From Ginglymostoma cirratum (lineage: Eukaryota), in contig JAHRHZ010000002.1 in the NCBI GenBank assembly GCA_024137785.1, positions 20,782,881 through 20,829,897 on the forward strand: a stretch of 47,017 nucleotides of DNA, in the 5' to 3' direction. The notes beneath the pieces are model-generated. The model was not told where the DNA came from. It searched no databases and saw only the letters and a program-made list of their open reading frames with translations. Position numbers and translations under genes: made by a program. Below are positions 723-44,609 of this stretch, piece by piece. Position 1 is the first letter of the stretch. Each line of letters opens with the position of its first letter.

Positions 723-1001
723 GATTTGGAGAATGGCCTTTGATCAACTTGAACAAGTACACTGGGAATGGAATCCAGCTCCTGTGTGAGTCCGAGAACT
801 GGTTTCCTCCACCGATGGTGCAATGGAGCAACGAGAAAGGTGTTATCCAGACTCAGCAGGGACAGCCAGTAACGGAGGAGCTACGCTCAGTCAACGTGAA
901 GAGCTACATTGATGTGACCAGTGATTCTGGGAACACCTTTAACTGTTTGCTAAAAAGCGAGATGCTGAACAAGGCAGTCTCTGCAGAGCTCCACGTCCCA
1001 G
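723..1001 (+). CDS. Gene 1 IgC (B7/BTN-type) exon, 279 nt
   Basis: ggcag|GA...CCAG|gtttgt. Encodes (G)FGEWPLINL...[19 protein letters not shown]...NTFNCLLKS...ELHVP, with both Ig Cys and the WFPxP motif of BTN IgC domains. Confidence 0.92.
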
Positions 1002-4000
1002 GTTTGTGAGCTTTGTGTCTCTATGTGCCTGTGTGTATGCCCATGTACTGTTGTTGGTGTCACCTCCAGCCAACATCCCATTGTGACGTGCTGATCGAAA
1101 GAACATTTGCCGTCCTTTAAATCAAAGGCATGGGGTGATGCAACTGCCATTTTTCTCAGTCCCTTGCTGCTGTGAACATTGATTTAATTTGTTATTGTTA
1201 CACAGTACCGAGGTACAGTGAAAAGTATTGTTTTGTGCTCACCAGACAAATCGTACCTTACGTAAGTACATCAGGGTAGTGGGACAGAATGCAGAATATA
1301 GTGTTATAGCTGCAAAGAAGGTGCATAGAAAGATCAGCTCGAACGTGAGAGAATTGTTTATAAGTCTAATTACAATGGGGAAGAAGCAGTTCTTGAATCT
1401 GTTGGTTTGTATTTTCAAACTTTGTATGTTCTGCCCGATGAAAGAGAGTATAACGGGGTAGGAGATGTCTTTGATGTTGGCTGCTTTTCTGTGACGGTGG
1501 GAAGTGTAGATGGAGTCAGTGGAAGGAAGGCTGGTTTTCATGGACAGGGCTGCGTTTCCAGCTCTCTCTAACTTTAAGGTCTTCAATTCCTCCATGTCCT
1601 TTTCTGCCCCTCCAACCCAGTCACCACATCTGCAATACTTAGTGACTACAGTCTTCTCCAGTGACTCATCGCCTGGGTTGTGATCAACTTGATGGGCCCC
1701 ATCAATGGCCACATCAACAGCCCCATGCCCTACTGTGACCTCCCTCCAGCCTGCATGACCTCTGTGTGCTTTGAACCTTTCCACCTTTTCTAACCCTCTG
1801 CTCTACTTTAATTCTGTCCCCTTGTGCTACCTTCGATTTTCTTCACACTCCCATCTGTGACTGTGTCTTCAGTTGCTTGTTGTCCAGGCCCCCTCTAAAT
1901 ATTTCTAGCCCTCTGCCCCACGTTCCTTTTCCTTAACTTAAGATGTTTGTCAAAACCTTCGTGTCTGATCAAGCTTTTGGATGTCAGGTCTATTATCTCC
2001 TTACATTACTTGGTGGCTGTTCTGCTCTGAAGCATGCTGGGCTGATTTACTATATAACGGGAACTATATAAATGCAGAAACTCACTGTGGGTCGAGAACC
2101 AACACTGAGGGCCATTCGTTGCTCCGACAAGCCCGTTTACTCAAGGGGTGATGGATTCGGAGGGTAAGATAAAAGACGAGTTCAGCGTTGGAGTGCCTGA
2201 CTTTGACGATTTATTATTTTAGCAATAATTTCATTCTGCTTTTTTTATTCTCCAGATGAATTCTACCCCAAGACATCCGTTTGGCTTTATATGTTCCTCT
2301 TGATTTTCTTTGGCATCCTTGGTCTCGTCGTTGGCCTCTTTCTGTTCTTCAGGAAACAAAAGAGACAGATCCGAGGTATGAACTTTTCGTTGTGCCATGG
2401 GTACGCAATTGGCAATTACTTTTTGATTCAAACACGGTTAGGTTATGTGACGATGTCCCAAAACCACAGGTTGTACCCACCCTCCAACCCAAACCCCACG
2501 GTGAATGGCAAGGGCAGCATGTGCTTAGGAACGTCACCACCCACAAGACGCCCTCCAAGCCGCTCACCGACCTGACTTGGAAATGTGTCGCCATTCATTC
2601 AGTGTTGCTGGGTCAAAATCTGGGACCTCCCTCTTTAACAGCACTGTGGATGACCCCAGAACAGCACATCATCATCTTTTTCCAGGGCAGTGATGCTGCA
2701 GAAAGGCCTATACACTTGTGAAAGAAACCAAAAGGGAAGGTCTGATTAAGTTCGAAGAGAACGTTCAAGTAATCTCCCCTTCATTTACCCCTCAGTGTTT
2801 TTTCTGCGTGCCATGCCCCTCAACCCATATGTACTCTCTTGCCCCAACCATCCCCAATCCAGATAATCATCTCTGTCTCCTTTTTACTTCCTCTACCCCA
2901 AATCAGCCTCCATGTCTTTGTGCAGCCTGAGGTTTGAGGGGATGACTGGGGGAGTTCGTCAGTGATATCTTGATGCTGAATATCTATCAGGCCATTGATA
3001 ATCCGCACTCACCGATATTGATGACTCTCTCTCGCTTTTTATTTTCCAGATCTAAGGAAGCGGCCAACAATAACTGGTGAGGAAAAAACAAAGACTTGTA
3101 TTTTAGCATTGCTGTTCACAACCTTGGAGAGCCAGGCTGCGTCCCTCTCGAACCTCCCACCCTGCGCCATCTGCGTCCTTTCTCCTGCGTCTGGGACTTT
3201 GCGGGACAGTGGGTCAGACACTGTCCTTTTCCCATCCCCACCCACTCTGGGACTAGGTGAGACAATGGGTCACTGACTCCTCACCCCGCCCCAGACCCTC
3301 AACACCACCACCACCACCACCACTCTCCACCTGGGACTGAGTGGCAAATTGGTTTACAGGGCAGCAAGGGCCATTTGGCCCATTGTGCTTATGTTTGCTG
3401 TCCAAAGGAGCAGTTGACTTCGTACTTTTCTCCTGCCTTCTCCTTGTGACCCTCGTACACTATTCATCTTCAGACAACTGTCTGATTCCCTCTGTAAGCC
3501 TGAATTAAATCTGCCTTCTCTGTGCTGTCAGCACACTCCAGACCTTGACCATTCCTGTGTGAAAACGGTTTTCCTCATGACTTTGACAAATTACTTTAGG
3601 CCTGCACCCTCTTAATCTTGATCTCTTCGTGACTGAGAACATTTAGAGCCTTTCCCTTAAACTTCTGCAGTTTTTACAATGCTTTCACATCCTTCCTAAA
3701 GTGCGGTGTCCAGAGCTAGGTCCTGGACTGCAGCTGTGGCTGGCCTAGTGTCTTACATAAGGTCAACACCATCTCCTTGCTATTGTACGCTGTCTCAGTC
3801 AAATGCTGTGTTTTCAACCTGGGGTTATATCTCGATATTGGGACTGAGATAGAGGGATTCTCAGTGGGACTAACAAAAGTTAGGCCTGCAAAGGATGTTC
3901 AGCAGGAACCATTCCAGAAAATATGGCGTTTGTCGGAATCAAAGGCACTTGAATGAGGATCAGAAGGCTTTGTTTCCAAGTGAATTCCTTTCTTTGAGTG

Positions 4001-7000
4001 GCTTGTGCTGTTTTTGTATTTTAGATTATGACAACATGAAGTCCTGCAATGGTAAGTAAACATTCCCAAATGTCCTGAAAGCATCACTGTGGATTTTCTG
4101 ACCCTGTAATAAGTGAGGCAGATGATGAGAGAGAACAGGCCAGTCCCAGGGGCACTAGGCAGAGGGAGTGGGTTAATTTTAATGGAACTGTCCCAGCAGA
4201 AATCTAATTGTGACAGAATTGGGGCCTGTATTATACTGTTATTATTTTTAAACCACCTTGCCAAGTTAACTCAATTAAAACTCTAGCTGCTGTCTTTTTT
4301 TTCCCTTAGTGTTGAAGATTGATAGAACTGCACAGAAGGACAAGGGTTAGGTCTCTGAAGAAGAGTCACTGGACCCAAAACGTTAATTCTGCTTTCTCTC
4401 CAAAGATGCCGCCAAGTTTCTTTAGCAATTTCTGTTTTTATTTTGACAATCCGCAGTGCACTGCTATATTTTTGGGTTAGAGTTGGCTGGGGGCAGAATT
4501 GTGTGAAACACAGCCAATCGAATGCTGATCAGAATAGAGATGCGGCAGTGGGACTGGGGAGGGCTTACCCAGTGACGCCCAGAGGGGGTGATGGACCAAA
4601 TGGATACGAGCTGGTAACTGTGAAGGAGGTGTCACTTGGAAGCGCGATGGGGATTGGGATGGCTCTCTCCTCTCCTGTAGGGTCCTTCTCGCAAGATCCT
4701 CTGGCTTAAATCCTCAGGAAGTTCCTAAATCTCCTCAACCCGTTTCAAAAGTGTGTGATTCAAATGATAGAAATGGTTTCTGCTTTTTTTTAAAAAAATT
4801 TTTTTTTTTTTCTTTTCAGAGGAACTCAGAGAAATAATGGGTAAGACCTCAGTCGAAAGGATTATAAATAAATGTGGAAGGGAGGGTTTGTCATTCTCTG
4901 TTGTGATCAGTACAATCGATGGATAATTCCCCCAATCCGTCTCAGTAGGGGTCAGAATAGAGCCTGTTCAACTATCTGAATGTACAGTCAACTTTGTTCC
5001 AGCAGAGAGCACTGTCTGGTATCTGCAATATCCACTCCCTTAACACTACGTTCCTATGATCTCTGCTTCTGACTTTGGCATGGGATCTTGTTCCTATGCC
5101 TGGGACCACAGCATACCTTGGTGCGGGATGTCAGCTATGACTCGAGTGTAGCACTCCAAGTCCAAAAGGTTCCAGTCCAGCTCTAATATAAAGGGTGAAA
5201 ATATAAACTAACTCTCCTGGTCAGTACCGAGGTGATTCTGCACTGTCAGGGGCACACGTTTCTCTTGAGATGTTGAACTGAGGTCTATCGGTGGATGTAG
5301 AAGATCACAAGACATCTCGCTATTTAGGAGATGAGCCGGAAGGTTTCCCTGTGTCCTGCAAATATTGATTGATACGGATTACGTAAACCTGTTTCCCGCA
5401 GCTATGTCTGCACCTCAAAAACTGCATCATTGGCTGTGAACAACCTGATGTCAACGTTTTTTGAGTTCCCACATGCTCGCTCTGCCTTTGCACCTTGTGG
5501 CCAATGTGAGCTGACCAACTCCGAATTATCGTCACATGATCTTTGTGTGCTCTGTCCTGCTGCACCAGTAGGTGGTGATGCCGCAATAAATGGGCACAGT
5601 TGTGATCTTGCAGGAAGAAAGGTTTTTGCCCTGCGGTTGTCTGTTTGTGTGTTCAGTCAGCGCACTCTGTAAAGCGCGGTGTAATACAGATATCTGTGAC
5701 TCCGACACCATAAGTAATTTTGTTGCTTTTCCTTTCCTGTACAGATTTTCGCTGGAAACAACTAGGTAAGAGGCTACCAGTGAGGTGATGTGTTTCGGGT
5801 GAGAATTTGAAACAAGACCCTGTCTTCCCTCTCAGGGATGTATGATATCCTGTGGCCGCTATGCTAAAGAAGAGCAAGGTGGTTCGGCCTGGTGTCCTGG
5901 GCAAAGTTTAACCCCCAATCACCATTGATTTTAAAACTCATTCATTTATCACTGACTGTGTTTTATCACCGACTTCAATCTGGAGACACAAGTAATAGTC
6001 TGGTAACCCAAGGTCAAATCCTGCCACGGCAAATAGTTGAATTTGAATTCAATAGAAATCTGGAAATAGTGGTAACTATGAAACTATTATCAGTTGTTGG
6101 AAAAAGACCCATCTGGTTCACTAATGCCTTTTAGGGAAGGAAACTGCCATCATTACCCAATCTGGCCTACATGTGACTCCAGACCCACAGCATCATGGTT
6201 GACACTTTTTATCTGGCCTGTGGGCCATTAGGGTATGGGCAATAAATGCTGGTTAAGACAGCAATGCTCTCATCCTGTGGGCGGCACGGTGTCTCAGTGG
6301 TTAGCACTGCTGCCTCACAGGGTCTGGGTTTGACTCCACCCTTGGGCTACTGTGTGGTTGCACATCCTCTCTACGTCTGCATGGGTTTCAACTGGATGCT
6401 CCAGTTTCCTCCCGCAGTCCAAAGATGTGCAAGTTAGTTGGATTGGCCATTCTAACTTACCCGTAGTGTCCAAGGATGTGTCGGTTAAGTGTATTAGCCA
6501 TGGGAAATGCAGGGTTACAGGAATAGGGGGAATGGGTCTGGGTGCGATGCCTGACGGATGGTTGGTGTGTACTCGTTGGACCGAATGGCCGGTTTCCACA
6601 CTGTAGAGAGACTGTGGAAGACAGTTGGTCTGTAATGATAGCCTCCCGCCAGCAAGGATATTTCTATCTCCAGGGCCACCAAACATGCCTTTCAATTGAA
6701 ATGGATAGAAGCTGAAGCAAATGGAGAGTTGGTGTGTTTGGGAAGATCCAGAGAAAAGGGAAACAGTTCCGGAATTTTAAAAAAAATGGCACGTTGACAC
6801 AAATTACCAATGCAGGCCACTCAACACCCATTGTCCATGCTGGTCTTTATGCACCACACGAACTTCTCACCTTGCAGTCTGCTGTGCCCCCCCCCCCCAA
6901 ACAACCCCCCCACCATTTCCCCATCCCTCATGTGGACATCAAGGCCCCCCCATCAATGGATTAACACTTCCTACCTCAACCATGCCATGTGTCAGTGATT

Positions 7001-10000
7001 CTTACCATGTGACTGCTTTCTGGGCCAAATAACTTCTCCAGACTTCTTCACTTGAATAACTTACGACTTTTTTTTAATTCCCCCCCCTCCTTTCCATCCG
7101 TGTTCTGGACTCGTGTAGGGACAGGAGGCCATTCAGCCCTTCCAGCCTACCGTACCAATCACAGAGACGACAACTGATCTGTAGCTCCACATCCCCTGAT
7201 ACCTCCTGTCTGACTCAAGCTGCATTATGTCATTCTTACCCACTTTGGAAAACAACTTTCCCATGTCCTCTCAAATGTTAACCTTAATTTGAAATTCCTC
7301 CATCAAGTCAGGTGTTTTAAGAGTTCCTATCATTTTTGATCTGTTCTGATAAGAGGTGAATGGACCAGGATCAATGGTTAAAGGATGCAACTTGGGAATG
7401 GAGATTTCCCAGCATGTTTCTGTAAGGGGTTAAAGTCATTTCAGTTGTACAACCCTGTGGATCCACAGTTATACAACCGATGTTTTCTCAGATTTGTGCT
7501 GAATGGTAAACACACATTCAATGTAAATCTGTTCAACTGCTAGCAGTATAAAGCTCTTCACTGACTAACTGACGTCATTTTCCTTTTTAGGTGAAATTCG
7601 CCCTCTCCCTCAACTAGGTAAGACATGGAGTAACTTTTCATCATTCTTAAGATGTGCGCATCACTGGTTGGGCCAAAATTTATTCCCCATCGCTCATTTC
7701 CCTTGAGAAGGTAGTGATGAGTTGTAGTCCTCTGGGACTTAGAGACCTCTAAGAGAGCTGATGGGGAGGGAGTTGTAGGATTTAGACCCAGTGACGCTGA
7801 AAGAATGCTGATTATATTTCCAAGTTAGAATGGTGAGCGGCTTGGAGGGGAATTTACAGGGGGTGGTATTCTCATGTACCTGCTGCCCTTGTCCTTCTAG
7901 ACGGCAGTGGTCTCTGGTTTGGGAGGTCCTATCAAAGATCGTGTTAGGGGTGAAATCTCACCTCTGCGTTCACCGTCACTAAACCCAGAGCTCGCAGAGT
8001 CTACAACTAAACTGTCTGATTCCCTGCCTCACCCTTTAAATATTTAGTCAGGTCTCCAAGACTTCTAAGCAGGCTCTGTTTTAGACACCTTTCTGAAAAC
8101 TGCACAAACGTACAATGAATTATTTGAAGGTGATTTAATCTCGTCCTCCTTGTCCTTTTCAGCAATTCAGAGAATGACTGATGCTGCAGGTAAGAACTGT
8201 GCCTCTTCAATAACTCCATGTTGAGTGGTGGTTCGGGAGCGGTGGAAGTGGGGAGGAGTGAATTGTTTATGTGGTGGTGAAAAAGTTGTTCCATTTGTGC
8301 ATGAGTGTGGAGGTGAAGGTATCAGTGCAAATGAATTGTGTGTAATTTGTACCTTTGTTTTTGGCCTCCTCCAGTGCTGAGAGATTCTATTCAGCCCATC
8401 GAATTTGTGCTAGCGTTTTGCAAGAGCTATTCAGTTGTTCCTCCTCCCTGCTGTTTTCCCCAAAAGCTACAAATTTTCCCTTTTAAGTATTTATCCAGTT
8501 CCCTTGCTTGATTGTTGTTTAGAAAAAAAATCTTGTATCCTCTTTGGCTAATTATTAGCAATCTATGTCATCAGATTACTGACCCTCCTGCCACTGACAA
8601 CTGAGAAAATGAGCATCTATTCAAACTCCTGAATGGATCGATCAAATCTCCTCCTCCTCACAGAATTAATGAGAGGATGATGTGGCAGTGGTCTTGCTCC
8701 CCTGTTTAATTTACTATTTAGCCATTGTTACTCTCGTTAACGACATATTGCATTAAATATCCACCAGTCCTCATTGTAAAAGTTTACTTATTCACAGAAT
8801 TTGTTGGCACAGAAAGAGGCCACTCAGTCCAACTAGGTTTGAGCTGGCATTCGTGTTCCATGTGCCCCCCCCCCCCAAAAAAAAATAAAGTAAGGTGGTA
8901 TGGGATTGAGGGAAGAGATAAAAGGTACTGCAGATGCTGGAGAATCCGAGATAACAAGGTGTGGGGCTGGATGAACACAGCAGGCCAAGCAGCATCATAG
9001 GAGCAGGAAAGCTTGACGTTTCGGGNNNNNNNNNNNNNNNNNNNNNNNNNNNNNNNNNNNNNNNNNNNNNNNNNNNNNNNNNNNNNNNNNNNNNNNNNNN
9101 NNNNNNNNNNNNNNNNNNNNNNNNNNNNNNNNNNNNNNNNNNNNNNNNNNNNNNNNNNNNNNNNNNNNNNNNNNNNNNNNNNNNNNNNNNNNNNNNNNNN
9201 NNNNNNNNNNNNNNNNNNNNNNNNNNNNNNNNNNNNNNNNNNNNNNNNNNNNNNNNNNNNNNNNNNNNNNNNNNNNNNNNNNNNNNNNNNNNNNNNNNNN
9301 NNNNNNNNNNNNNNNNNNNNNNNNNNNNNNNNNNNNNNNNNNNNNNNNNNNNNNNNNNNNNNNNNNNNNNNNNNNNNNNNNNNNNNNNNNNNNNNNNNNN
9401 NNNNNNNNNNNNNNNNNNNNNNNNNATACAAACCCGGCTGTACAATAGAAGACAGAGGGTGGTAATAGATGGAAAATATTCAGCCTGGAGCTAGGTGACC
9501 AGTGGTGTTCCGCAGGGATCTGTTCTGGGACCTCTGCTCTTTGCGATCTTTATAGATGACTTGGATGAGGAAGTGGAAGGGTAGGTTAGTAAGTCTGCCA
9601 ATGACACGAAGGTTGGTTGAGTTATGGATAGTATGGAGGGCTGTTGTAGGCTGCAACAGGACATTGACAGGATGCAGAGCTGAGCAAAGAAGTGGCAGAT
9701 GGAATTCAACCCAGAAAAGTGTGAAGTGATTCATTTTGGAAGGTCGAATTTGAATGCAGAATACAGGGTTAATGGCAGGATTCTTGGCAGTGTGGAGTAA
9801 CAGAGGGATCTTGGGGTTCACGTCCATGGATCCCTCAGAGTTGCTACCCAAGTTGATAGGGCTGTAAAGAAGGCTTGCATTGGCAGGGGAATTGAGTTTA
9901 AAGAGCTGAGAGGTTATGCTGCAGTTCTGTAAAACCCTGGTTAGATGACATTGGATACTGTGTTCAGTTCTGGTCGCCTCATGAGAGGAAAGATGTGGAA

Positions 10001-15245: not shown

Positions 15246-15249
15246 TACT

Positions 15250-25338: not shown

Positions 25339-25885
25339 CAGAGATAGTAAGTACTGCAGATGCTGGAGTCAGAGATAATACGATGTAGAGCTGGAGGAAC
25401 ACAGCAGGCCAGGCAGCATCTGAGGAGCAGCAAAGTTAACATTTCAGGTCGGGACCCTTCTTGAGAAATGGGGAGGGGGAAGGACAGCTGGGAAATAAAT
25501 AGAGAGGAGGGGTGGGGCTGGGGAAGGTAGGTGGGATGGTGATAGGTGAGTGCAGGTAGGCAGTGGTGGGGTTTGGTCGCTGAGGTCAGAGGGGTGAATA
25601 GGTGGGAGAGATGATGGATAGGTTATGTCAGGTCAAGGAGGTGGGGTTGAGAGGGAGGATTGGACATGGGATGAGGCCAGGGCTGGGGAGATTTTAAAGC
25701 TGGTGAATTCCACGTTTAGGCCATCGGACTGTAGGCCCCCGAGGCGGAATATGAGGTGCTCCACTTTGTAGATGGTGTCATTTGTGACACTGGAGGAGGC
25801 CCACGATGGACACGTCACCCAAGGAGTGGGAGTGGGAGTGGGAGTGGGAGCTAAAATGGTTTGCGACCGGAAGGTGTTGTCATTT
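25339..25885 (-). mobile_element. Penelope-like retroelement 3' end (GIY-YIG endonuclease C-terminus plus terminal repeat)
   Basis: The minus strand encodes QHLPVANHFSSHSH...LGDVSIVGLLQCH[frameshift]NDTIYKVEHLIFRLGGLQSDGLNVEF, followed by a C/T-rich UTR and the shared terminal repeat. Confidence 0.8.
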
Positions 25886-26279: not shown

Positions 26280-26337
26280 ATGGAGCGTGGGGCCCTGTGT
26301 CTGATTCTCCTCCTGAGGATCCATTCTACACTGGCAG
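26280..26337 (+). CDS. Gene 2 signal-peptide exon (exon probably starts at 26233, with 5'UTR)
   Basis: agcATGg has a good Kozak context. Encodes MERGALCLILLLRIHSTLA, then G|gtaaga. The upstream acceptor tctttcag| at 26231-26232 implies a further non-coding exon. Confidence 0.85.
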
Positions 26338-35300: not shown

Positions 35301-38300
35301 TGGAGTCCATGAGATCCAATCATTTTAGGTCAGTGACAGGGAAAAGAATTGATTGTGGAGAAATGTTGGTGAGATTTTTTTGTGAAAAGACAGATGTAGA
35401 CAACCGGGTGGGTGAAGCTACTAATGGTAATAATGATTGAATGGTGGGATAGTCTTGAGGGCCTGAACGACCTATTCCTGCTCCTTGTTCATACGTTCAG
35501 TACAGAGGAATCTGTACCCAGCCTGCCAGTCTGGCCTACTCCTGAATCTGGGCCCACTATGACATGGTCCACCAGCGAAGCTCTCCGAGGGAGTCTGGAA
35601 TTCATTGAAGATATTTCATCACCATCTCCTTAATAATTCACTGAGGGAGAGGTCAGGGACATGTATCTCTTCAAAATGAATCAGAAAGTTAGCAATAGGA
35701 GAAAACCTTGTCCCAGTAGTCAATAGTTGATCTGCGCCTGAGCTACATTTACCTTTGGCCCATGTCTACCAATCTACTAATCAAAATGAACAGTTGACTC
35801 TGCGTTGGTTGCTCTTTGTGGAAGAGAATTTCAAACATCCTCCACCCTTCTGCTTGGACGCATTTGTAAATTTTATTCCTGAGTAATTAAGCCCCAGTTT
35901 CTGCCCTCTGCTTCCTGGTCTCTAACCAACAGAAATAGATACTCACTGTTCTTTTTGATGTCTTGAAAATTTTGACCAAACGCTTATTACCCTTCTTATT
36001 TCTAGGGAGTAACAACCCTTGCTTGTGTCATCTCTCCTCACAGTTTGATACTTGGAATCCTGGTATCATTCTGGCAAATTGACTTTGTACTGCCTGTAGG
36101 GTCAATGCACATTTCTAAGGTGTGGTGCCCAGAATTGAACACAGTATTGTGCATAAGGTCGGATGAGGGCTTTGTGTAGCTGAGACATGATTTCTATCCC
36201 CCTATTATTCTCCTCACACCTACTGGTTTGTGAGGCAGACAAAAGACCTGCCCTGGTGTCTTCCCATAGCTTGGTTTTTCCTGAGAACATGTTTAAGAGC
36301 CTATAGATTGAAGGGGATCTCTCTGCATGGAATTTGGCCAATCAAGAGACTCTCCCAGTCTCAGCATTTGCTGTAAGGATTTACAGGTTGATAGTTACCC
36401 ATCTTATGAATGCCCCTTCTGTGATCATCAGTCCTGGAGCAGGATTTGATCTCAGCTGCTGACTGAAAGGCTAGGATCATATTCACTGGGTGTCCAGATA
36501 CTCTTCATCAACCTCTGGTGCAGTTGGGACTTGAACCCAAGACTTCTGGATCAGAGGTAGGCACACTATCATTGTGCCATGAGAGATCCTAATCTCACTG
36601 GGCCTCCAATCCCTTTGTATTCTAATTCTCTATCATTGTTTCTGAGCTGGACTGCCAAGCTTCATTTTTAGTTAATGATCATTTGCCAATAGTTAACTCC
36701 TGTGCTTACTGACAAACGTTGGATTCCAGTCCCTATCAACCTTCGAATCCTGATTTTAAAATCTTCACTGCTGACTCCTGGGCCCTGAGCTTTGAAAGAC
36801 CCACCGGAAACCTCTCCGACATTCCAGCACACTGAAAAGATGACCAAAGTCTTATCTATCTGTGTACCCTTTTGAAAAGCTGCTCAAATATTTCCTTATT
36901 TGGCTAGCTATCTAATTTTGGTCACTTTTGTGAAGCATCTTGGGATGTGTTACTATGTTAAAGACTCTCTGTAAATACAAGTTTTTATTCTTGTTGAGCA
37001 TGGTTGCCCATTGATCCTTATTCTTTTTATTGCAGAGTATGAAGAGCTATGCAGTCAAACAAGTAAGAATCAGTTTGGCTATTTCCCATCTACTGTTGAG
37101 AGAGTTCCTTCAATCTCACAAGTGTTTGCACTTGATGAATCTTGACTGTCACTGAGCGCTCAGTCCAAGATAAAGGGGACCACGTAGAGGGTTCCACGGC
37201 ACTGTGTTTGCTGTTGAAGAACTCTGGCCCCCTGCAGTCAGTGGGATAGAGTGTCCCAGAGAGCCCCCTGTAGCCAGTGGGACAGTATGTTCCAGTGTGC
37301 CTGTTGCAGTCAGTTTTGTCTTATGCACTCATGGGCTGTGGGCATTGCTGGCTGGGCCTGCATGTCTATTGACTGTCCCTTTGAGAAGGTGGTGGTCAGC
37401 TGCCTTTTTAGTCCCTGAAGTCCATGTGCTGTAGGTAGATCCACAATACCCTTAAGGAGGGAATTCCAGGATCCTGACGCAGCGACATTGAAGGAACGGT
37501 GATATATTTCCAAGTCATGATAGTGAATGACTTGGATGAAAGCTTGCAGGTGGTGGTGTTCCCACGTATCTACTGCCATTGTCCTTCTAGATGGAAGTGG
37601 TTATGGGTATGGAAGGTGCTGTCTGAGGATCTTTGGTGAATTTCTGCAGTGCAACTTGTAAATAGTCCACAGTGCTGCTACTGCGTGTCCGTGTTGGAGG
37701 GAGTGGATATTTGTGGACGTGGTGCCAATCAAGTGGGCTGCTTTGTCCTGGATGGTATCAAGCTTCTTGAGTGTTGTTGGGGCTGCACTCATACACTGAA
37801 GCGGGGAGTATTCCATCACACTCCTGACTTGTCCCTTGGACAGGCTTTGGGAGTCAGGAGGTGTGTTACTCACCGCAGTATTCCTAGTGTCTGACCTTTT
37901 CTTGTAGCCATTCTGCTTATCTGGTGGGTCCGGTTGAGTTTTTGGTTAATGGTATCCCCAGGATTTGATTATAGGGGTATTCGCTGATGGTCACACCATT
38001 AACTTTTCAAGTGGCATTGGTTACATTATCTCACATTGGTGACGGTCATTGCCCGGTATTTGTGTGGCGCAAATGTTACTTCCTACTTGTCAGCCCAAGC
38101 CTGGATATTGTCCCGATCCCATTGTATTTGAACACGAGCTGTGTTCAGTAACTGAGGAGTCATGAATGGTGCTGAATATTGTTCCGTCAGCAGCAAACAC
38201 CCCCATTCTGGCCTTATGGTTGAAAGAAGGTCATTGCCAAAGCAGGTAAAGATAGTTGGGCTTGGGACATTACCCTGAGGAACTCCTGCAGATATGCCCT

Positions 38301-41300
38301 GGAGCTGAGTTAATTGGGATGCTGTATTCCAAAATACAGCCATAGGCCTGCTCTAGACCTCTGGTTGAGTTTCACTGACCGGCACCATCTTTCTCTGGTT
38401 CAGATCAATGAGATGATATCTGCCATTTGTAGGTGTCAAGAGGACTGTTAAATATTTTAATATTATTCCACTTACAACGCATAAGTCAGAACTGTGATGG
38501 GATACTCCCTACTTGCCTGGATGAATACAGCTCCTAATCACTCAAGAGGCTTGACACCATCGAAAAAATAGCAGTCCATTTGACTGGCACCACACCCTTC
38601 CCTCTCTCTACCCCTGGTGCTCAGTAGCAGCGGAGTGTTCTATAAATTTCCAATCTTCTGAACTGCTCATCCTTGATGTGTCTTTTTCCTTTTTCAGAGG
38701 ACCTTGAGAACGATGTTGGTGAGTTTTCTAATTCAGTGTTTTTGTTGACTGTTGATTTGACTTGTATCCACATCACTGAGTTGGATATGTTCCATTGGTT
38801 TCTCGTTTTAATTGGGATTGATAGATTTTGATCCAAAACCTGGGAATAATCTGTCTTTTAGTAGATGGTAACTTGTGGCTAATAGCCTACCACTAGTTGG
38901 TGAGTACAAAGCATCCTGTTTCCCCACGCCCAGGGCTAGGCAGAGCTCTGATCCAGATACTAGGTGAGGTCCAGACAGGGATCTGACCCAGATACTGTGT
39001 GAAGTTCTGGCAGAGACCTGATTCATGCCCTAGGCCAGGTCCAGGCAGAAATCTGATCTAGATCCAAAGCCAGTCACAATGAAAAGTCTCTTTGTGTCTC
39101 CCTGGACAATGAAAGCCTATCCTGATCCAGTTTCTGTCAGTTTATAATTTCAAGCATGAAGATTGTTTCTCTACTATCACTAATTAAGTTTTTTTACGTT
39201 TGCTTTGTTTTCTCACAGCGAGTGCTAATGCTAATTTAGGTAAGTTACTCTCAATCCAATGTGAGAGGGATGCTTCTCTCTCACATTCTGATTCTCACTG
39301 TGTCTGAACCTGGGTATGTTCCTCCACCTTAAGCTGCAATTTAAATACATACTGGTATTCTCCTTCTTTGTCTCTGTCTTTCTTGAGTTGGACATAGAAT
39401 TGGAAAATGAAAGCTGAGAGGATAAACCCAATAACCAAGGCTGAACAGAAAGACTGAGGATGGGACTTTCAGATTGAAGTTATTAAAGTTTTGAAAGGAG
39501 CTTCCATACAGTAGACATGGAAAAGATGTTTCTAATGCTGGAGGAAATCATTGAGATTGACCTCCTGGGCTGAATGGCCTGTATCTTTCCAGGGACCTGT
39601 AGCATTTATTTAGAAACAAAGGAAGTAGGAGTAGGCCACTTGGCCCTTCGAGCTTGCCCTGATCATGAGTCTCTTCCTCAGAAGGTGGTGGAAGCAGAGT
39701 CTTTGAATACTGTAAATACCATGATGTGGAGGTGCCAGTGATGGACTGGGATGAACAAAGTCAGAAGTTACAAGACACCAGGTTACAGTCTAACAGGTTT
39801 ATTTGAAATTACAAGCTTCTAGAATGCTGCTGCTTCATCAGGACTTCACTTGACAAGAAACATCACACCAAAAGCTTGTGGTTTCAAATAAACCTGTTGG
39901 ACTATAACCTGGTGTTGTGTGACTTCTGACTTTGAATACTATTAATGCAGATGTTGCTAGATACTTGCTGAGAAAGGGGTGAAAGGGTATCAGAAAGGGT
40001 AGGAGGAAATGTGGATGAATCAAATCAGACATCGAATGTGCAGAATAGACTCGTTGGGCTGAGTGGCCTGCTCCCTGTCCTGAGGCGTAAATTTATGTGA
40101 CCTATTGTATATATCCCTTATTCTACCTCTCTCCCAGTGCCTCCTTTTGTCTGCTTCTCTCCGTCACTGTCTGTCTCATTGTCCCACTGCCTCCCTTTGC
40201 CTGCCTATCACTGTGTGTCTCTCGCACTCTCGCTTGCTTTCTGTCACTCTGTTTCTGTTGCTCTCTGTCTCCTTCCGTCATGTTTACTGAGGATTGTGGT
40301 GGGATGTTATTGGATTAATATGGTCTTGAGGTAACATAGGAATGGATGAGAGTTTCAGTGATGGATGAGCTGAGGCTGGGTATAGTTGGACAGCGTTGGG
40401 GGGTGGAATAAGTGGACTTGACTTTTCCGACTGGATACGTTTGTGGTGGGATTGGTGGTCTAGTTCTGCTTGAGTAGAGCATTGATCATGCCACAGGGAG
40501 GTAATGTTTTATTAACGAAGATATCTTTGCTTCATTACAGGTCTGGAGAAGATTCTTTGTCGAACAGGTAAGGTCTCAACGGGCTGGTGCAGCACTGGTC
40601 AAATTCTCAGTGTTTCTCTATATCTGACCTCCACAGTGTGCTCCCATCTGAACCTGACTCCCTCCACTTTCACAGAAAGGCTAGATAGCCTGTTGGCTTA
40701 TCCCACTGTCCTATCAATGGTTGGAGATTTGATAAATGCCAGCGTCAATGGGCTGAATGGCATCTGTCTACGCTGTAAAGATTCAGTGATAGTGTTGATT
40801 GATGAGATGGAGTGGAGCTGTGGATTATTAGTCTGGCTGCACACATGACCCCCTGGACAGGGGGTCATCACTCCTCACCCTGACAGCTAAAAGTTACAGA
40901 TCAGAAAAGCCCATTGACCCATTAAAGCTCATCCCTTGAGAAGACCTCAACTGTTTCCCATCAGTGACATCTCCACTGTGGGAAAACTAAAATCCTTCCT
41001 CGATTTTCGTGGAAAGATTGTAACTGTTTCTATGTTTCCAGAACATTGTGCGCTGCACAGTGGAGCATAGAACAGTACAGCACAGGAACAGGTCCTTCGG
41101 CCCACCATGTTTGTGCCATCCATGATGGCATTCTAAGCTACTCCCATCTGCCTGCCAGTGGTCCATAATCTGGCTATTTCTTGCCTGTTTGTGTGTCAGT
41201 CTAAATGCCTCTTAAACATTGCTATCATCTCTGCCTCTAGTGTGTCCCCTGACAGAGCATTCCAGGCACCTACCACCCTCTACATAAAAAAAGAAACTTG

Positions 41301-44300
41301 CTATGCACATCTCCTTGAAATGTTTCCCCTTTCACTTTAAATCGATGCCCCTTGTATTTGACATTTCCACCTTGGGACTATCCATACCCCACAAAATTTT
41401 ATAACTTCTATCAGTTTGCCCGTCATCTCTGAAGTTCTTTTGAAAACAATCCAAGTTTGTCCAATCCCTCCTTATAGCTAATGTGCTCCAATCCAGGCAA
41501 TGTCCTGGTAAACCTCTTTTGCATTCTCTCCAAAGCCTCCACATCCTCCCAATAGTGTGGTGATCAGAACTGCACACAGTACTCCAAATGTGACCTAACT
41601 AAAGTCTTGAACAGCTGCAACATGACTTGCCAACTTTTATACTCAATGCACCAACTGATGAAGGCAAGCATGCTGTATGCCTTCTTTATTATCTTATCCA
41701 TTTGTGTTACTACTTGCAGGGAGCTATGGACTTGCACACCAGGATCCCTCTTTAATCAATGATCGTTTGGGTCCTGCCATTTACTGTATACCTTCCTCTT
41801 ACATTTGACCTCCCACAGTGCAACACCTCACACTTGTCCAGATTAAAATCCATCTGCCATTTCTCCACTCAATTTTCCAAATGGTAACTCTATTCATTGA
41901 CCATTTTCTCCAGAACTCCACCAATTTTCATGTCATCTGCAAATGTACTAATCAGTCTACCTACATTTTCATCCAAATAATTTAGATATACTACAAACAA
42001 CTGAGGTCCCAGCATTGATCCTTGTGGAACACCACTGATCACTGTCCTCCAGTCAGTAGAATACCCCTCCACAACTACCTTCTGTCTTCCAAGATCAAAG
42101 CCAATTTTGTATCCAACTTACCAACTCACCCTAGATCCCATGTGCCTTAATCTTCTGGTCCAGCCTATCATGAAGACCTTGTCAAACGCTTCAGTAAAGT
42201 GCATGTAGACAACATCCACTGCCCTCCTACATCAATTATTGTTGTCACTTCCTCAAAAAATCCAAATTTGTGGGACAAGACCTCCCTTGAACTAAGCCAT
42301 GATGACTATCCCGAATAAGTCCATTCTTTTCCAAACACGAGTGAATCCTGTCCCTAAGAATTTTCTCCAATAATTTCCCTACCACTGATGTAAGACTCAC
42401 CAGCCTATAATTTTCTGCATTACCCCTGTTGCATTTCTTAAACAATGAAAGAATCTTAGCTATTATCCAGTTGTCTGGGACCTTGCCTCTGGCTAAAGAG
42501 GGTATAAACATCTCTGTCAAGATCCCATCAAACTCCTCCCTTGCCCCCTTCAGTATCCCAGATCCCATCAGACCCTAGGAACTTATCTGCCCTAATGTTT
42601 TACCAACACCTGCTTTTTCACATTGACAAGCCCCAGAATATCAACATTCTCCCCTCTCATCTTACCATGATCCATGTCCCTCTCCTTGGTGAATGCTGGT
42701 GGAAAGTAAGCATTGAGGAACATCCCCACTTTCTGTAGCTCCACACATAAATTCCTACCTTTGTCCTTGAGTGGACCTACCCTTTCCTGAGCTACCCCTT
42801 GCTCCTGATATATGTATAAAATGCCTTGGGATTCTCCTTAATCGTACAAGCCAAGGACACACCATGGCGCCTTCTAGCCCTCCTAATTTCGTGTTTAAGT
42901 TCTTTTCAGCTTCCTTTATACTTTGCAAGACCTCAAGTGATGCTGACAGTTGTTGAATGCATTAATGCATGTGTTGGGGGGCGACGGGGTCGTAGGTAGT
43001 GGTTATTTGTCACAAAATGAGTCAAGCTGTGTTGTTGGTGGTGGGTGGGGTGCTGGTGGTGGTGGTTGAAGAAAATGTTCAACGATCCTTTAACTTCAAT
43101 TCTGTGTGTTTTCAGCTGCCGAAAGGGTCATCGCTGCTGCAGGTGAGGAGGGGTTTTCTAGTCACTTTGGCACGTTCTTCCCCCATTTCCCGGGAATCAC
43201 ACTGGGAGTTCTGTTCCACACCCTTTGGGGTTAAGATAACCAGAACTCTCCCTTTGATGGGGAGCTAAACTACGAAGGTCATCCTTTGAGAAGTGCTGTT
43301 TAAGCTCGCAAAGCATCATGTAAAGAGCAGGAGAATTCTCCAGCCAATCATTCATCCCTCGACCCATTAAATCCTGGCACAGTCTCCTCAGGTGCTGGCC
43401 AAGTTTGTACACAACTTGTCTCTCTGGCCCCAATCATGCACATTAACTGAAGAACTGATTTTTGATATTAAAAAAAAATGTTGCTTCCATTGTAGCTCCC
43501 TCAATAACATGTACTGGGGGAAGAGTTGCAGATCTTCACTCTCCTTTGTGTGAAAAATTGCTTTCTGATGTAGCCTGAACAGCTTTGTTTTAGGGTTTGA
43601 GATTCTGTCCTTCTGTGTACCCTGCCCCCCACACACAACCAGGGGGAATTGTTTCTCCCTCTCTCCCTCCAATCGAATCCTTTAACTGTATTAAATATGT
43701 CAGTTGGAACATTCCTTCATTTTCTATATTTATGATATACAAAACCAGATCTGTTTAATCTTGTTCACTTCAGTTGTATTTTGGTGGAACTGTAATGCAT
43801 CCACTCCAAGGCTACCATAGCCGCTTTCTGTATTGGTGCCCAGAACTGTGTGGTATATGGGGCTTGATCGAAGCTCAATCCATTTCAACGTCCCTTTCTA
43901 CCGTAGGGAAAAGACATGGGACTGATCGGGTAACTCTACCAAAGAGCCGTCACACTCACAATAGGCTGAATGGCCTCCTCCTATGCTGTGGTTCTTTAAA
44001 CGTTTTCCAGTTGCCCACTCACATCAGTGATTTCTGGAGAATGCTGAAAGTTGGTGTCAGAGGCCTGACCTGTGACTTCCTTTTGTGTTGACAGTACCTG
44101 TGACCTTTGACCCAGAGACCGCCAACCCCTACCTGATAATCTCAGAGGACCAGCTGACCGTGACGTTCAGTGAAAATTGGCAGGACCTTCCGGAAAGCCC
44201 GAAGAGGTTTGTCTCCCGGCTCTTTGTGATCGCGAAAAAAGGATACAAGAGTGGGAGCCAATACTGGGAGGTGCTGGTGGGCAACAAGCCTGACTGGGAT

Positions 44301-44609
44301 CTGGGAGTGGTCAAGAAATCCATCTCCAGGGAAGAGTGGATCACATTGAGCCCGGAGAACGGGTATTGGACCATCGGGAAGCGGGGTGATATCTATGAGG
44401 CCTATGAAGCGATGCCTGTAGAACTTGAGTACAAGACGATTGCTCCGAAAATTGGCATCTACCTGAACTACGAGGAGGGGACAGTTCGTTTCTATGATGC
44501 AGACTGCATGGTGCAAATCTACAGCTGCACGGCGAAATTCACAGAGGAAATCTACCCATTCTTCAGCCCCTGGGGATCCCAAGAAGGGATGACAATCTGC
44601 CCCCTTTAA
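26280..44609 (+). CDS. Butyrophilin-like gene 2, complete CDS: join(26280-26337, 29103-29456, 32477-32761, 34027-34146, 34842-34868, 37036-37062, 38698-38718, 39219-39239, 40541-40567, 43116-43142, 44095-44609); 493 aa SP-IgV-IgC-TM-juxtamembrane-B30.2
   Basis: Eleven exons with ag/gt boundaries total 1482 nt in one frame from ATG to TAA. Canonical butyrophilin domain order. Confidence 0.92.
28366..29025. mobile_element. Solo LTR (660 bp) with 4-bp target-site duplication
   Basis: Termini TGTGACA...TGTAACA, flanked by AAAC at 28362-28365 and 29026-29029. Contains an internal (GA)n run. Confidence 0.7.
29103..29456 (+). CDS. Gene 2 IgV exon, 354 nt
   Basis: ctctccag|AG...ACCA|gtaagt. Encodes EVFRVTGPEAPVIAMVGGVAVLECQL...MEIQWVR...YLGRTEF...GNISLRLRDVRLEDEGDYLC, a BTN/MOG-type V-set domain with an NIS sequon. 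Confidence 0.95.
29489..30390. repeat. C/T-rich low-complexity minisatellite, about 900 bp
   Basis: Strong pyrimidine bias. Includes ~24-bp units such as cccatctcttcccgcgcctccact at ~29914-29985. Confidence 0.9.
30847..32355 (-). mobile_element. CR1/HER1-type LINE, 5'-truncated, same young subfamily as 9426-10497
   Basis: Minus-strand [38 protein letters not shown]...[15 protein letters not shown], with a catagaacatagaa tail. Confidence 0.93.
32477..32761 (+). CDS. Gene 2 IgC exon, 285 nt
   Basis: ttgtag|GT...CCAG|gtcagt. Encodes SFGQRPVIRLDGY...GIGLQCASSSWYPLPTMHW...DGLYRVSSSI...FSCLVKS...LRIP. Confidence 0.94.
32945..33265 (+). mobile_element. LINE fragment (CR1/L2 group)
   Basis: Encodes YKAQVRSVMEYS...APTTLKKLDTIQDKA. 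Confidence 0.75.
33410..33545 (+). mobile_element. Older Penelope-type terminal repeat with decayed hammerhead-like core
   Basis: ctgaagga-gagtt..gactt-gaaatgtt followed by ctctccacagatgc.gccagacctgctga. Related copies occur at 4352-4465 and 17575-17685. Confidence 0.55.
34027..34146 (+). CDS. Gene 2 transmembrane exon, 120 nt
   Basis: tttccag|AT...AAAG|gtatga. Encodes DEFFPRMSRFFTAFILLLILLFGLLAAAGVYQYKQQKCIK. Confidence 0.92.
34842..34868 (+). CDS. Gene 2 micro-exon 1 (27 nt), ELQKRPTIK
   Basis: ctctttcag|...AG|gtatgt. Homologous to 3050-3076. Confidence 0.88.
37036..37062 (+). CDS. Gene 2 micro-exon 2 (27 nt), EYEELCSQT
   Basis: tttattgcag|...A|gtaaga, phase 1-1. Confidence 0.85.
37320..38345 (-). 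mobile_element. LINE 3' kilobase (CR1/L2 group RT)
   Basis: Minus-strand AGVPQGNVPSPTIF and QVRSVMEYSPL...LDTIQDKAAHLIG. Confidence 0.85.
38698..38718 (+). CDS. Gene 2 micro-exon 3 (21 nt), KDLENDV
   Basis: ctttttcag|...G|gtgagt. Confidence 0.85.
39219..39239 (+). CDS. Gene 2 micro-exon 4 (21 nt), ASANANL
   Basis: ttctcacag|...AG|gtaagt. Confidence 0.82.
   Translation, partial: RVLMLI
39712..39934. mobile_element. Second Penelope-type palindromic element inserted in a CR1 3' fragment
   Basis: Arms 39756-39818 and 39872-39934 are inverted. The direct repeat ctttgaatact flanks it at 39701-39711 and 39930-39940. Confidence 0.7.
40541..40567 (+). CDS. Gene 2 micro-exon 5 (27 nt), GLEKILCRT
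   Basis: ttcattacag|...CAG|gtaagg. Confidence 0.82.
41065..42945 (-). mobile_element. CR1-type LINE, 5'-truncated and decayed
   Basis: Minus-strand NYRLVSLTSVVGKLLEKILRDRI and SGVPQGSMLGPQLFVVYLNYLDENV...FADDMK. Confidence 0.9.
43116..43142 (+). CDS. Gene 2 micro-exon 6 (27 nt), AAERVIAAA
   Basis: gttttcag|...GCAG|gtgagg. Confidence 0.85.
44095..44609 (+). CDS. Gene 2 terminal B30.2 (PRY-SPRY) exon
   Basis: ttgacag|TA. Encodes VPVTFDPETANPYLIISED...QDLPESPKRF...SGSQYWEVLVG...WDLGV...PENGYWTI...KIGIYLNYEEGTVRFY...IYPFFSP...TICPL*. Confidence 0.96.

What the first reader, a model, noticed from the sequence alone, without database searches (positions are those of the whole stretch)
723..44609. 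Tandem pair of diverged full-architecture butyrophilins in a probable shark: candidate heteromeric gamma-delta T-cell regulator pair
Seen: two co-oriented genes about 15 kb apart. Their proteins are strongly diverged, yet TM exon length (120 nt) and micro-exon series (27/27/21/21/27/27 nt) are identical, so the membrane-to-B30.2 distance is conserved to the residue. Known: mammalian BTNs work as heteromers of neighbouring paralogs (BTNL3/BTNL8, Btnl1/Btnl6, BTN2A1/BTN3A1) acting on gamma-delta TCRs, and cartilaginous fish have gamma-delta T cells. Inference: the conserved register is what in-register juxtamembrane pairing would require, so this may be an ancient BTN heterodimer module.
Basis: partly seen in the sequence, partly recalled or inferred. 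Interest (0 to 1): 0.8.

Follow-up and report, generated by a model that had tools for sequence, protein, structure and literature searches.

The report
Conserved shark butyrophilin gene pair
Two neighbouring, strongly diverged butyrophilin immune genes of a shark keep exactly the same tiny-exon layout between membrane and inner domain, and this pair and spacing are kept in 14 other sharks and rays, but nothing yet shows that the two proteins work as a pair.

Summary
Both genes have a 120-nt TM exon, then micro-exons of 27/27/21/21/27/27 nt, all AG/GT and phase 1. Gene 2 is complete. Gene 1 starts at its IgC exon, and its leader and IgV lie outside the window. RNA from three studies shows gene 2's last four junctions exactly as predicted, plus m2>m3.

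The pair is old. Gene 1 (lineage L1) and gene 2 (L2) each have orthologues in sharks and rays. L1 and L2 are sister lineages (97/97) and appear adjacent in at least six other species. All 19 primary orthologue models from 14 species have exactly 91 residues between the IgC and B30.2 exons.

But a third lineage is just as invariant at 107, and sister paralogues inherit their layout. The shared register therefore shows common descent plus a family-wide length constraint, not heteromer pairing.

Charge-pairing tests were weak, and folded models show the L1 helix kinked and the L2 helix continuous. The heteromer and gamma-delta roles remain untested.

The gaps lie in a repeat-filled intron and between the genes. 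The scan also noted another BTN pair 5.6 kb downstream (unchecked).

The parts
723..1001 (+). Gene 1 (L1 lineage) IgC exon, 279 nt, phase 1/1. It is the first gene 1 exon inside the window.
   Evidence: Pfam C2-set_3 (butyrophilin Ig-C) E 3e-14. AG/GT flanks. 92% identical to Rhincodon P0162.
2256..2375 (+). Gene 1 connecting-peptide/transmembrane/stop-transfer exon, 120 nt
   Evidence: 95% identical to P0162.
3050..3076 (+). Gene 1 micro-exon m1, 27 nt (LRKRPTIT)
   Evidence: Splice scan. Matches the P0162 juxtamembrane region.
4025..4051 (+). Gene 1 micro-exon m2, 27 nt
4820..4840 (+). Gene 1 micro-exon m3, 21 nt
   Evidence: 6/6 identical to P0162.
5745..5765 (+). Gene 1 micro-exon m4, 21 nt
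7591..7617 (+). Gene 1 micro-exon m5, 27 nt. It carries the L1-typical IRxLP kink motif.
   Evidence: The helix break falls here in the P0162 model.
8163..8189 (+). Gene 1 micro-exon m6, 27 nt
   Evidence: 8/8 identical to P0162.
9026..9425 (.). Assembly gap inside gene 1's last intron. Not filled.
   Evidence: The left flank is a ~110-bp dispersed repeat. The right flank is 88% identical to the reverse-transcriptase element at 31405-31912.
11058..11590 (+). Gene 1 B30.2 (PRY/SPRY) exon with stop codon
   Evidence: Pfam SPRY E 2e-18. Acceptor and phase. 84% identical to P0162.
22615..23014 (.). Assembly gap in the intergenic region. Not filled.
   Evidence: Both flanks are copies of the same ~80-110-bp repeat.
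26280..26337 (+). Gene 2 (L2 lineage) leader exon, ATG plus signal peptide, 58 nt
   Evidence: Scan. Matches the N-termini of Chiloscyllium P0161/P0274.
29103..29456 (+). Gene 2 IgV exon, 354 nt
   Evidence: Pfam V-set E 2e-12.. 76% identical to P0161.
32477..32761 (+). Gene 2 IgC exon, 285 nt
   Evidence: Pfam C2-set_3 E 5e-20..
34027..34146 (+). Gene 2 transmembrane exon, 120 nt
34842..34868 (+). Gene 2 micro-exon m1, 27 nt (LQKRPTIK)
   Evidence: The last three bases before m2 in the RNA loose end fit its 3' end.
37036..37062 (+). Gene 2 micro-exon m2, 27 nt
   Evidence: Its sequence is the loose end joined to 38698 in the X2 RNA contig.
38698..38718 (+). Gene 2 micro-exon m3, 21 nt
   Evidence: RNA joint 38718>39219 in X15, X1 and X2
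39219..39239 (+). Gene 2 micro-exon m4, 21 nt
   Evidence: RNA joints on both sides
40541..40567 (+). Gene 2 micro-exon m5, 27 nt
   Evidence: RNA joints 39239>40541 and 40567>43116
43116..43142 (+). Gene 2 micro-exon m6, 27 nt
   Evidence: RNA joints 40567>43116 and 43142>44095
44095..44609 (+). Gene 2 B30.2 (PRY/SPRY) exon with stop codon
   Evidence: Pfam PRY E 3e-17 and SPRY E 2e-16. Best solved relatives are the BTN3A3/BTN3A1 B30.2 domains, E about 3e-36. Covered by RNA.
44610..46777 (+). Gene 2 3' UTR (approximate end)
   Evidence: The X1 mRNA contig runs 2127 nt beyond 44650. AATAAA at 46751.

Best explanation
The window holds two members of an old tandem array of butyrophilin (BTN) genes in an orectolobiform shark. 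Gene 1 belongs to a lineage I call L1. Gene 2 belongs to its sister lineage, L2.

Both encode type I membrane proteins with this layout: IgV-IgC ectodomain, one transmembrane helix, a roughly 50-residue amphipathic helical juxtamembrane stalk built from six micro-exons, and a cytosolic B30.2 domain.

The identical 120 + 27/27/21/21/27/27 nt layout was inherited from the single L1/L2 ancestor. That ancestor duplicated in tandem before sharks and rays split. Purifying selection on stalk length has kept the layout since, while the stalk sequence drifted.

Such strict length constraint is a general property of shark BTN lineages, since each lineage has its own fixed length. By analogy with human BTN3A (inferred), the most likely reason is that the stalk is a dimerising helix that sets the position and rotation of B30.2 relative to the membrane.

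Shown here: gene structure, splicing and transcription of gene 2, orthology, sister relationship, conserved spacing, and conserved neighbourhood (by proxy).

Inferred: that the stalk dimerises, and that the function is immune-regulatory. Whether the partner is self or the neighbour is open.
For: - Exon models and phases.
- Domains. Nearest solved structures are BTN3A/BTN2A B30.2 domains.
- RNA junctions in three studies.
- Orthologues: gene 1 is 84-95% identical to Rhincodon P0162, and gene 2 is 75-85% identical to Chiloscyllium P0161/P0274.
- B30.2 tree: L1 clade 100/100 and L2 clade 100/99, each containing sharks and rays.
- Tree of Ig plus B30.2 with the TM/stalk removed: L1 and L2 are sisters at 97/97.
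- Spacing is 91 residues in 9 L1 and 10 L2 models from 14 species. It is 107 in all 6 L3 models and 59 in both L4 models.
- Neighbourhood: consecutive accessions on one contig in Heterodontus, Pristis, Hypanus and C. punctatum. Read-through models join L1 > L2 (> a third BTN) in C. plagiosum and Mustelus.
- Stalk hydrophobicity has a period of 3.5-3.6 in both lineages. The L1 and L2 profiles correlate at r = 0.65 at shift 0 only.
- AF2 models give a TM helix, a break at the conserved RPT, then a long stalk helix.
- Human precedent for a stalk coiled coil that controls BTN3A homo- and heteromers: PMC10665462.
Against: - Gene 1's leader and IgV are not in the window, and its RNA was not examined.
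- Micro-exon lengths in other species are inferred from protein spacing only.
- Some isoform or older models lack one or more micro-exons (82, 66 or 59 residues), so the length is not absolute at the transcript level.
- Dimerisation of the stalk is inferred from periodicity and from mammalian BTN3A, not shown.
Confidence: 0.75

Rival explanations
1. L1 and L2 proteins form an obligate heteromer through an in-register parallel coiled coil of their equal-length stalks. They would act together as a ligand or regulator of gamma-delta (or other) lymphocytes, like BTN3A1/BTN3A2 or BTNL3/BTNL8.
For: - The pair appears adjacent, and co-oriented where fused models show the strand, across sharks and rays.
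- Among five shark BTN lineages, only these two share the 91-residue spacing.
- Their hydrophobic seams coincide (r = 0.65 at shift 0).
- Summed g-e' charge score over six species: hetero +9, against L1 homo +4 and L2 homo -6.
- L2 has an invariant Glu where L1 has an invariant core Ile (column 35).
- In human BTN3A the stalk decides homo- versus heteromer formation (PMC10665462).
Against: - Sister paralogues inherit the same layout.
- L3 is equally invariant at a different length.
- In the window species the charge score shows no heteromer preference (+2/0/+1), and both stalks are net acidic.
- The charge trend comes from few, related species and an assumed register.
- AF2 monomer models show the L1 stalk broken at the conserved GxIRxLP motif and the L2 stalk continuous.
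- There is no co-expression, association or receptor evidence.
- Tandem duplicates stay linked without any functional pairing.
Confidence: 0.2
2. The identical series is structural inertia without function. Micro-exons simply rarely change length, and the stalk is a passive linker.
For: Stalk sequence identity between the genes is low outside m1 and m6. Exon lengths are generally more stable than sequence (general knowledge).
Against: - There is no indel in 91 codons in 19 orthologues since the shark/ray split, while the IgC and B30.2 exons of the same genes do carry indels.
- Amphipathic periodicity and several invariant positions (RPT, column 21 Leu, ERVI) are conserved.
- Other lineages did change micro-exon number, so change is possible.
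Confidence: 0.05

Closest known systems
Annotated elasmobranch orthologues: Rhincodon typus XP_048472517.1 (P0162, 'BTN1A1-like') for gene 1; Chiloscyllium punctatum XP_072406182.1 / GCC38318.1 (P0274/P0161, 'BTN3A3-like') for gene 2
   Same: Same domain order, same 91-residue TM-plus-stalk spacing, and 72-95% identity per exon. Same neighbour arrangement in Chiloscyllium.
   Different: These are only automatic gene models. No paper found here describes the two lineages, their pairing or the invariant stalk.
Human BTN3A1/BTN3A2/BTN3A3 and BTN2A1 (phosphoantigen-sensing complex)
   Same: IgV-IgC-TM-helical stalk-B30.2 layout. The B30.2 domain is the best match among solved structures (E about 3e-36). 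They are neighbouring paralogues, and the stalk coiled coil controls homo- and heteromer formation (PMC10665462).
   Different: On the limited sampling, which included no mammalian BTN, the shark lineages group together apart from the bony-vertebrate BTNs. This suggests the duplication is independent of the mammalian ones. PMC12841164 also reports class-specific duplications. No clear RKKKR versus xExEx type charge switch was found. Phosphoantigen pocket residues were not examined.
Human BTNL3/BTNL8 and mouse Btnl1/Btnl6 heteromers
   Same: Adjacent diverged paralogues with the same architecture.
   Different: Their heteromer status is experimental. Here it is only a hypothesis, and no orthology is implied.
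Chicken BG genes
   Same: The cytoplasmic region is built from many micro-exons of 21 nt (7, sometimes 8, residues) forming heptad coiled coils, and they are BTN family members (PMC4046983).
   Different: BG genes have one Ig domain, no B30.2, and a highly variable number of micro-exons. The shark genes have a fixed 27/27/21/21/27/27 series followed by B30.2.

Membership tests
Butyrophilin (BTN/BTNL) family | N-terminal signal peptide and IgV domain | tested here: met
   Gene 2: leader 26280-26337 matches orthologue N-termini, and the IgV exon hits Pfam V-set at E 2e-12. Gene 1: these exons lie outside the window and were not seen. Its orthologue P0162 has them.
Butyrophilin (BTN/BTNL) family | Membrane-proximal IgC domain of the BTN type | tested here: met
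   Pfam PF22705 C2-set_3 'Butyrophilin subfamily 3 member A2-like Ig-C': gene 1 E 3e-14, gene 2 E 5e-20.
Butyrophilin (BTN/BTNL) family | Single transmembrane segment followed by heptad-like juxtamembrane region encoded by micro-exons | tested here: met
   120-nt TM exon and six 21/27-nt exons in both genes. Period 3.5-3.6. Helices in the AF2 models of the orthologues.
Butyrophilin (BTN/BTNL) family | C-terminal cytosolic B30.2 (PRY/SPRY) domain on one exon | tested here: met
   Gene 2 hits PRY plus SPRY. Gene 1 hits SPRY, with an alignable PRY part. The best solved matches are BTN3A.
Butyrophilin (BTN/BTNL) family | Linkage to the MHC or its extended region | not tested
   Only leads. Scan notes place MHC class I and II genes 12-16.5 Mb upstream on the same piece. 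PMC12841164 reports BTN and MHC-I on one chromosome in three other cartilaginous fishes.
Heteromeric BTN pair (BTN3A1/3A2, BTNL3/8 type) | Neighbouring paralogous genes | tested here: met
   14.7 kb apart on the same strand. Adjacency inferred in six other species.
Heteromeric BTN pair (BTN3A1/3A2, BTNL3/8 type) | Physical association and mutual dependence for surface expression | not testable with these tools
   Needs co-IP, FRET or surface rescue. No multimer modelling was available.
Heteromeric BTN pair (BTN3A1/3A2, BTNL3/8 type) | Complementary stalk features that favour the heteromer over homomers | tested here: inconclusive
   g-e' score sums are hetero +9, L1 homo +4 and L2 homo -6 over six species, but +1/+2/0 in the window species. 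Net charge is not complementary here.
Heteromeric BTN pair (BTN3A1/3A2, BTNL3/8 type) | Co-expression in the same cells | not tested
   Only gene 2's RNA was examined, because one read-laying run was allowed.
Gamma-delta TCR ligands/regulators | Binding to or selection of gamma-delta T cells | not testable with these tools
   No data. PMC12841164 argues that BTNs persist even in squamates, which it reports lack gamma-delta T cells, so the link is not obligatory.

The most novel reading that the evidence does not exclude
L1 and L2 are an obligate heteromer whose equal-length stalks pair in register. This would be an elasmobranch-wide BTN heterodimer, older than the shark/ray split and apparently independent of the mammalian BTN3A/BTN2A1 and BTNL pairs. 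Heteromeric BTN signalling would then be a recurrent or ancestral solution in jawed vertebrates. The micro-exon skipping seen in some isoform models (minus 9 residues) would act as a switch of stalk register.
Probability: 0.2. Interest if true: 0.75.

Novelty: new member of a known kind. Interest (0 to 1): 0.45.

Why it matters
Butyrophilins are central to gamma-delta T cell biology in mammals, where they often act as heteromers of neighbouring paralogues and where the juxtamembrane helix decides pairing. How old this design is remains unknown.

This locus gives a concrete system outside mammals to test that. The evidence here indicates two sister BTN lineages kept side by side since before sharks and rays diverged. 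Both have a stalk whose length has not changed by one residue in 14 species, while other BTN lineages in the same genomes have other fixed lengths. Gene 2 is shown to be expressed and spliced as predicted.

The finding does not itself show a heteromer. Its value is as a defined, conserved candidate pair, and as evidence that stalk length is under strict constraint throughout the family.

Tried and rejected
- The word search with gene 2's B30.2 exon alone found nothing, because full-length relatives fall outside its length band. This was solved with the representative search and with an alignment of P0010 plus gene 1's exons as separate rows.
No loci of other species could be read, so micro-exon lengths and synteny elsewhere are inferred from protein spacing, accession order and fused models.
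- Net-charge complementarity of the stalks: orthologues trend L1 slightly basic and L2 slightly acidic, but the window genes are -2 and -3, so this was rejected as evidence.
- Position-specific g-e' pairing score: a weak trend only, treated as inconclusive.
- The idea that all shark BTNs share the series was rejected, since other lineages have 59, 107 or 132 residues.
- The idea that gene 1 hides an exon in the gap is unlikely. The frame is continuous and orthologues have no extra residues. It was not tested with RNA.
- Run X16 gave no reads on the stretch.
- Rfam found nothing in the window.
- A look-up of scan notes beyond the window's end was not possible.
Exons were searched one by one by reference. 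Folding used the database orthologues P0274 and P0162.
- Scripts only: junction codons were translated. The 51 stalk residues of each window gene were laid out in memory for charge scoring, and were not saved or searched.
- The N gaps were not filled, and the read stretch was chosen to contain no N.

Full report
**What is in the window**

Six-frame ORFs and Pfam show two sets of butyrophilin-type exons on the + strand.
- A BTN-type IgC domain (PF22705) lies at 716-1009 and at 32458-32769.
- A V-set domain lies at 29105-29470.
- PRY/SPRY domains lie at 11123-11590 and 44085-44609.

Reading the splice sites gives the following exons.
- Gene 1: IgC 723-1001, TM 2256-2375, B30.2 11058-11590.
- Gene 2: IgV 29103-29456, IgC 32477-32761, TM 34027-34146, B30.2 44095-44609.

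I then scanned for AG...GT-bounded open segments in phase 1 with a pyrimidine tract and a good donor. Between the TM and B30.2 exons of each gene this returned six collinear best-scoring micro-exons.
- Gene 1: 3050-3076, 4025-4051, 4820-4840, 5745-5765, 7591-7617, 8163-8189.
- Gene 2: 34842-34868, 37036-37062, 38698-38718, 39219-39239, 40541-40567, 43116-43142.

A leader exon for gene 2 (26280-26337, a hydrophobic signal peptide with a GTAAGA donor) was found by scan. It matches the N-termini of the Chiloscyllium orthologues.

Gene 1 has no leader or IgV exon in the window. The window begins inside the intron before its IgC exon. 'Full architecture' is therefore seen for gene 2 only.

The two proteins are 35% (IgC), 28% (TM) and 41% (B30.2) identical. 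Their IgC exons differ by 2 codons and their B30.2 exons by 6. The TM exon plus stalk has no length difference: 91 codons from the end of the IgC exon to the start of the B30.2 exon in both.

**The gaps (tested first, as asked)**

Gap 9026-9425 lies in the last intron of gene 1, between m6 and the B30.2 exon.
- Its left flank is a ~110-bp dispersed repeat with copies at 19550, 22492, 23931 and elsewhere.
- Its right flank is 88% identical to the reverse-transcriptase-bearing element at 31405-31912.
- The gap therefore sits inside transposon sequence.
- The reading frame passes from m6 (phase-1 donor) to the B30.2 exon (phase-1 acceptor) without needing anything from the gap.
- The annotated orthologues have no extra residues at that point.
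- RNA across this junction was not examined, so a hidden alternative exon is unlikely but not excluded.

Gap 22615-23014 is intergenic, flanked by copies of the same short repeat. It makes the 14.7-kb gene distance approximate. I did not fill either gap, and the read stretch I chose contains no N.

**RNA evidence**

- The runs were raw polyA RNA reads (X15) and spliced contigs of two further studies (X1, 3832 nt; X2, 3696 nt).
- All three show GT..AG joints that resolve to 38718>39219, 39239>40541, 40567>43116 and 43142>44095. These are exactly the predicted m3>m4>m5>m6>B30.2 junctions.
- The loose end attached to 38698 in X2 reads the whole m2 exon preceded by the last bases of m1.
- In X1 the B30.2 exon begins at contig position 1147. 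That fits 967 nt of predicted upstream coding sequence plus about 179 nt of 5' UTR, and leaves no room for further coding exons.
- The contig runs on for 2127 nt, which fits the AATAAA at 46751.

Gene 2 is therefore transcribed and spliced as modelled. Run X16 had no reads here. Gene 1 was not tested with RNA.

**Relatives**

The word search with one exon found nothing, because of its length band. I then ran a word search with an alignment of the best full-length hit plus gene 1's exons as separate rows. These returned automatic gene models from many sharks and rays.

- Gene 1 is 92% (IgC), 95% (TM) and 84% (B30.2) identical to Rhincodon typus XP_048472517.1 (P0162). It is about 72% identical to a Chiloscyllium model.
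- Gene 2 is 75-85% identical to Chiloscyllium punctatum P0161/P0274 and 72% identical to Heterodontus P0010.

The source is thus an orectolobiform shark whose own proteins are not in the collection. An earlier scan note calls it nurse shark (not checked).

**Two old sister lineages**

A B30.2 tree places gene 1 in a clade (L1, 100/100) and gene 2 in another (L2, 100/99). Each clade contains both sharks and rays.
- L1 includes Pristis, Hypanus, Hemitrygon and Amblyraja.
- L2 includes Pristis, Hypanus, Hemitrygon, Mobula, Rhinoraja and Narcine.

The duplication therefore predates the shark/ray split. That split is of the order of 250-300 million years by general knowledge, not computed here.

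A tree of the Ig and B30.2 parts, with the TM/stalk region removed so as not to be circular, joins L1 and L2 as sisters (97/97). Other cartilaginous-fish lineages (L3, L4, L5 and a Callorhinchus protein) fall outside that pair. A small set of bony-vertebrate BTNs served as outgroup.

**Conserved neighbourhood (by proxy)**

The L1 and L2 models carry consecutive accession numbers on the same contig in four species.
- Heterodontus: XP_067865485/6 and XP_067865487.
- Pristis: XP_051899635 and XP_051899636/7.
- Hypanus: XP_059827092 and XP_059827093.
- C. punctatum: GCC38317 and GCC38318, locus tags chiPu_0016831 and chiPu_0016832.

Read-through gene models need same-strand neighbours, and they add further cases.
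- A whole L1, a whole L2 and a third BTN are joined in C. plagiosum (P0275).
- An L1 5' part is joined to L2 in Mustelus (P0158).
- L2 is joined to a different BTN lineage downstream in Scyliorhinus canicula (P0159) and Narcine (P0008).

This fits the scan's unchecked note of another BTN pair 5.6 kb beyond this window. The 'pair' is therefore the first two genes of a longer conserved array.

**The spacing across species**

I measured the residues between the end of the IgC exon and the start of the B30.2 exon.
- L1: 91 residues in all nine primary models.
- L2: 91 residues in all ten primary models. Together these cover 14 species and show no gaps.
- Exceptions are isoform or older models that lack whole micro-exon units. 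One lacks m2 (82 residues, Pristiophorus X2). One lacks m5 (82, Carcharodon X2). Two early Chiloscyllium models have 59 and 66.
- Other lineages differ. L3 has 107 in all six species, L4 has 59 in both species, L5 has 132, and Callorhinchus has 83-84.

Equally, each lineage is rigid at its own length, including L3, which is not part of this pair.

**The stalk itself**
- In both lineages the mean hydrophobicity of the stalk has its strongest period at 3.5-3.6 residues.
- The L1 and L2 profiles correlate at r = 0.65 in register and near zero at every shift.
- Conserved features shared with L3 are an (E/D)LxKRPT motif at m1 and an aromatic residue two positions later.
- L1 and L2 share an A-x-x-R-h-x-x-A-A last micro-exon that L3 and L5 lack. 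This is in line with their sister status.

AF2 models of the orthologues were built from a 27-sequence alignment (mean pLDDT 87 and 85; stalk 58-87).
- Both give a TM helix, a break at RPT, then a stalk helix.
- The L2 stalk helix is continuous for 40 residues.
- The L1 stalk is broken at the conserved GxIRxLP of m5, into 25 + 9 residues.
- An equal residue count therefore need not mean equal geometry.

**Does anything favour a heteromer?**

In human BTN3A the stalk coiled coil decides homo- versus heteromer formation through a charge switch (PMC10665462). I looked for the same here.
- Net stalk charge tends to be slightly positive in L1 and slightly negative in L2 orthologues. In the window species both are negative, at -2 and -3.
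- With the heptad register read from the hydrophobic seam, g-e' pairs summed over the six species having both genes score +9 for the heteromer, +4 for L1/L1 and -6 for L2/L2. In the window species the scores are +1, +2 and 0.
- That sample is small and phylogenetically related.
- One position is striking: column 35 is an invariant Ile in L1 and an invariant Glu in L2.

These are hints, not evidence. No co-expression, association or receptor test was possible.

**Comparison with what is known**

Butyrophilins in cartilaginous fishes, and their presence on the MHC class I chromosome, have been reported (PMC12841164). That paper does not treat tandem pairs, heteromers or exon structure. Cytoplasmic heptads encoded by 21-nt micro-exons are a known BTN/BG family trait (PMC4046983).

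The genes here are ordinary members of the family with annotated orthologues. What seems undescribed is three things together:
- the L1/L2 sister pair;
- its conserved neighbourhood;
- the residue-exact stalk length over the whole elasmobranch radiation.

**Verdict**

The pair is ancient and conserved. The identical micro-exon series is best explained by common descent plus a family-wide constraint on stalk length. The heteromer and gamma-delta reading is a reasonable but untested hypothesis, at about 0.2.

Noticed in passing
window 3050-4051 (gene 1 m1-m2 junction): The DYDNM (YxNM-type) motif noted by the scan is specific to this species. L1 orthologues keep the Tyr (8 of 9, Phe in Pristiophorus) but not Asn at +2 (for example Rhincodon DYANT, Chiloscyllium EYNTK). 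An (E/D)LxKRPT...(Y/F/H) motif is shared by L1, L2 and L3.
   Followed up: partly
window 29542-30340 (gene 2 intron after the IgV exon): A CT-rich minisatellite with a 22-24/46-nt unit and about 28 copies. It produces long spurious Pro/Ser/Leu ORFs on the + strand and the strong negative GC skew at 30-32 kb.
   Followed up: partly
window 39685-40082 (gene 2 intron between m4 and m5): A short repeat with word depth in the thousands in the RNA contigs and many variant letters and loose ends. It is a very abundant dispersed element (SINE-like) and not part of the gene. There is no Rfam match.
   Followed up: partly
window 9426-9925 (+), 31405-31912 (-), 38083-38343 (-), 41679-42568 (-): Fragments of reverse-transcriptase-bearing retroelements (Pfam RVT_1) lie in introns of both genes. 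Copies of a ~80-110-bp repeat border both assembly gaps (8914-9025, 19550-19673, 22478-22612, 23015-23095, 23931-24127, 25339-25471). This is the family the scan noted as Penelope-like with a hammerhead.
   Followed up: partly
database proteins P0160 (Pristiophorus L2 isoform X2) and P0172 (Carcharodon L1 isoform X2): These isoform models lack exactly one 9-residue micro-exon unit (m2 and m5 respectively). This suggests micro-exon skipping that would shift the stalk register. No such joint was listed for gene 2 in the RNA laid here.
   Followed up: no
database proteins P0275, P0158, P0159, P0008: Automatic annotation fuses neighbouring BTN genes into 746-1645-residue read-through models in four elasmobranch species. 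This is useful as a synteny proxy but a warning for family counts.
   Followed up: partly
stalk column 35 (m5) in L1 and L2 orthologues: An invariant Ile in all L1 against an invariant Glu in all L2, at a position that is a core 'd' position in the L1 heptad pattern. Column 44 is likewise an invariant Glu in L2 only.
   Followed up: partly
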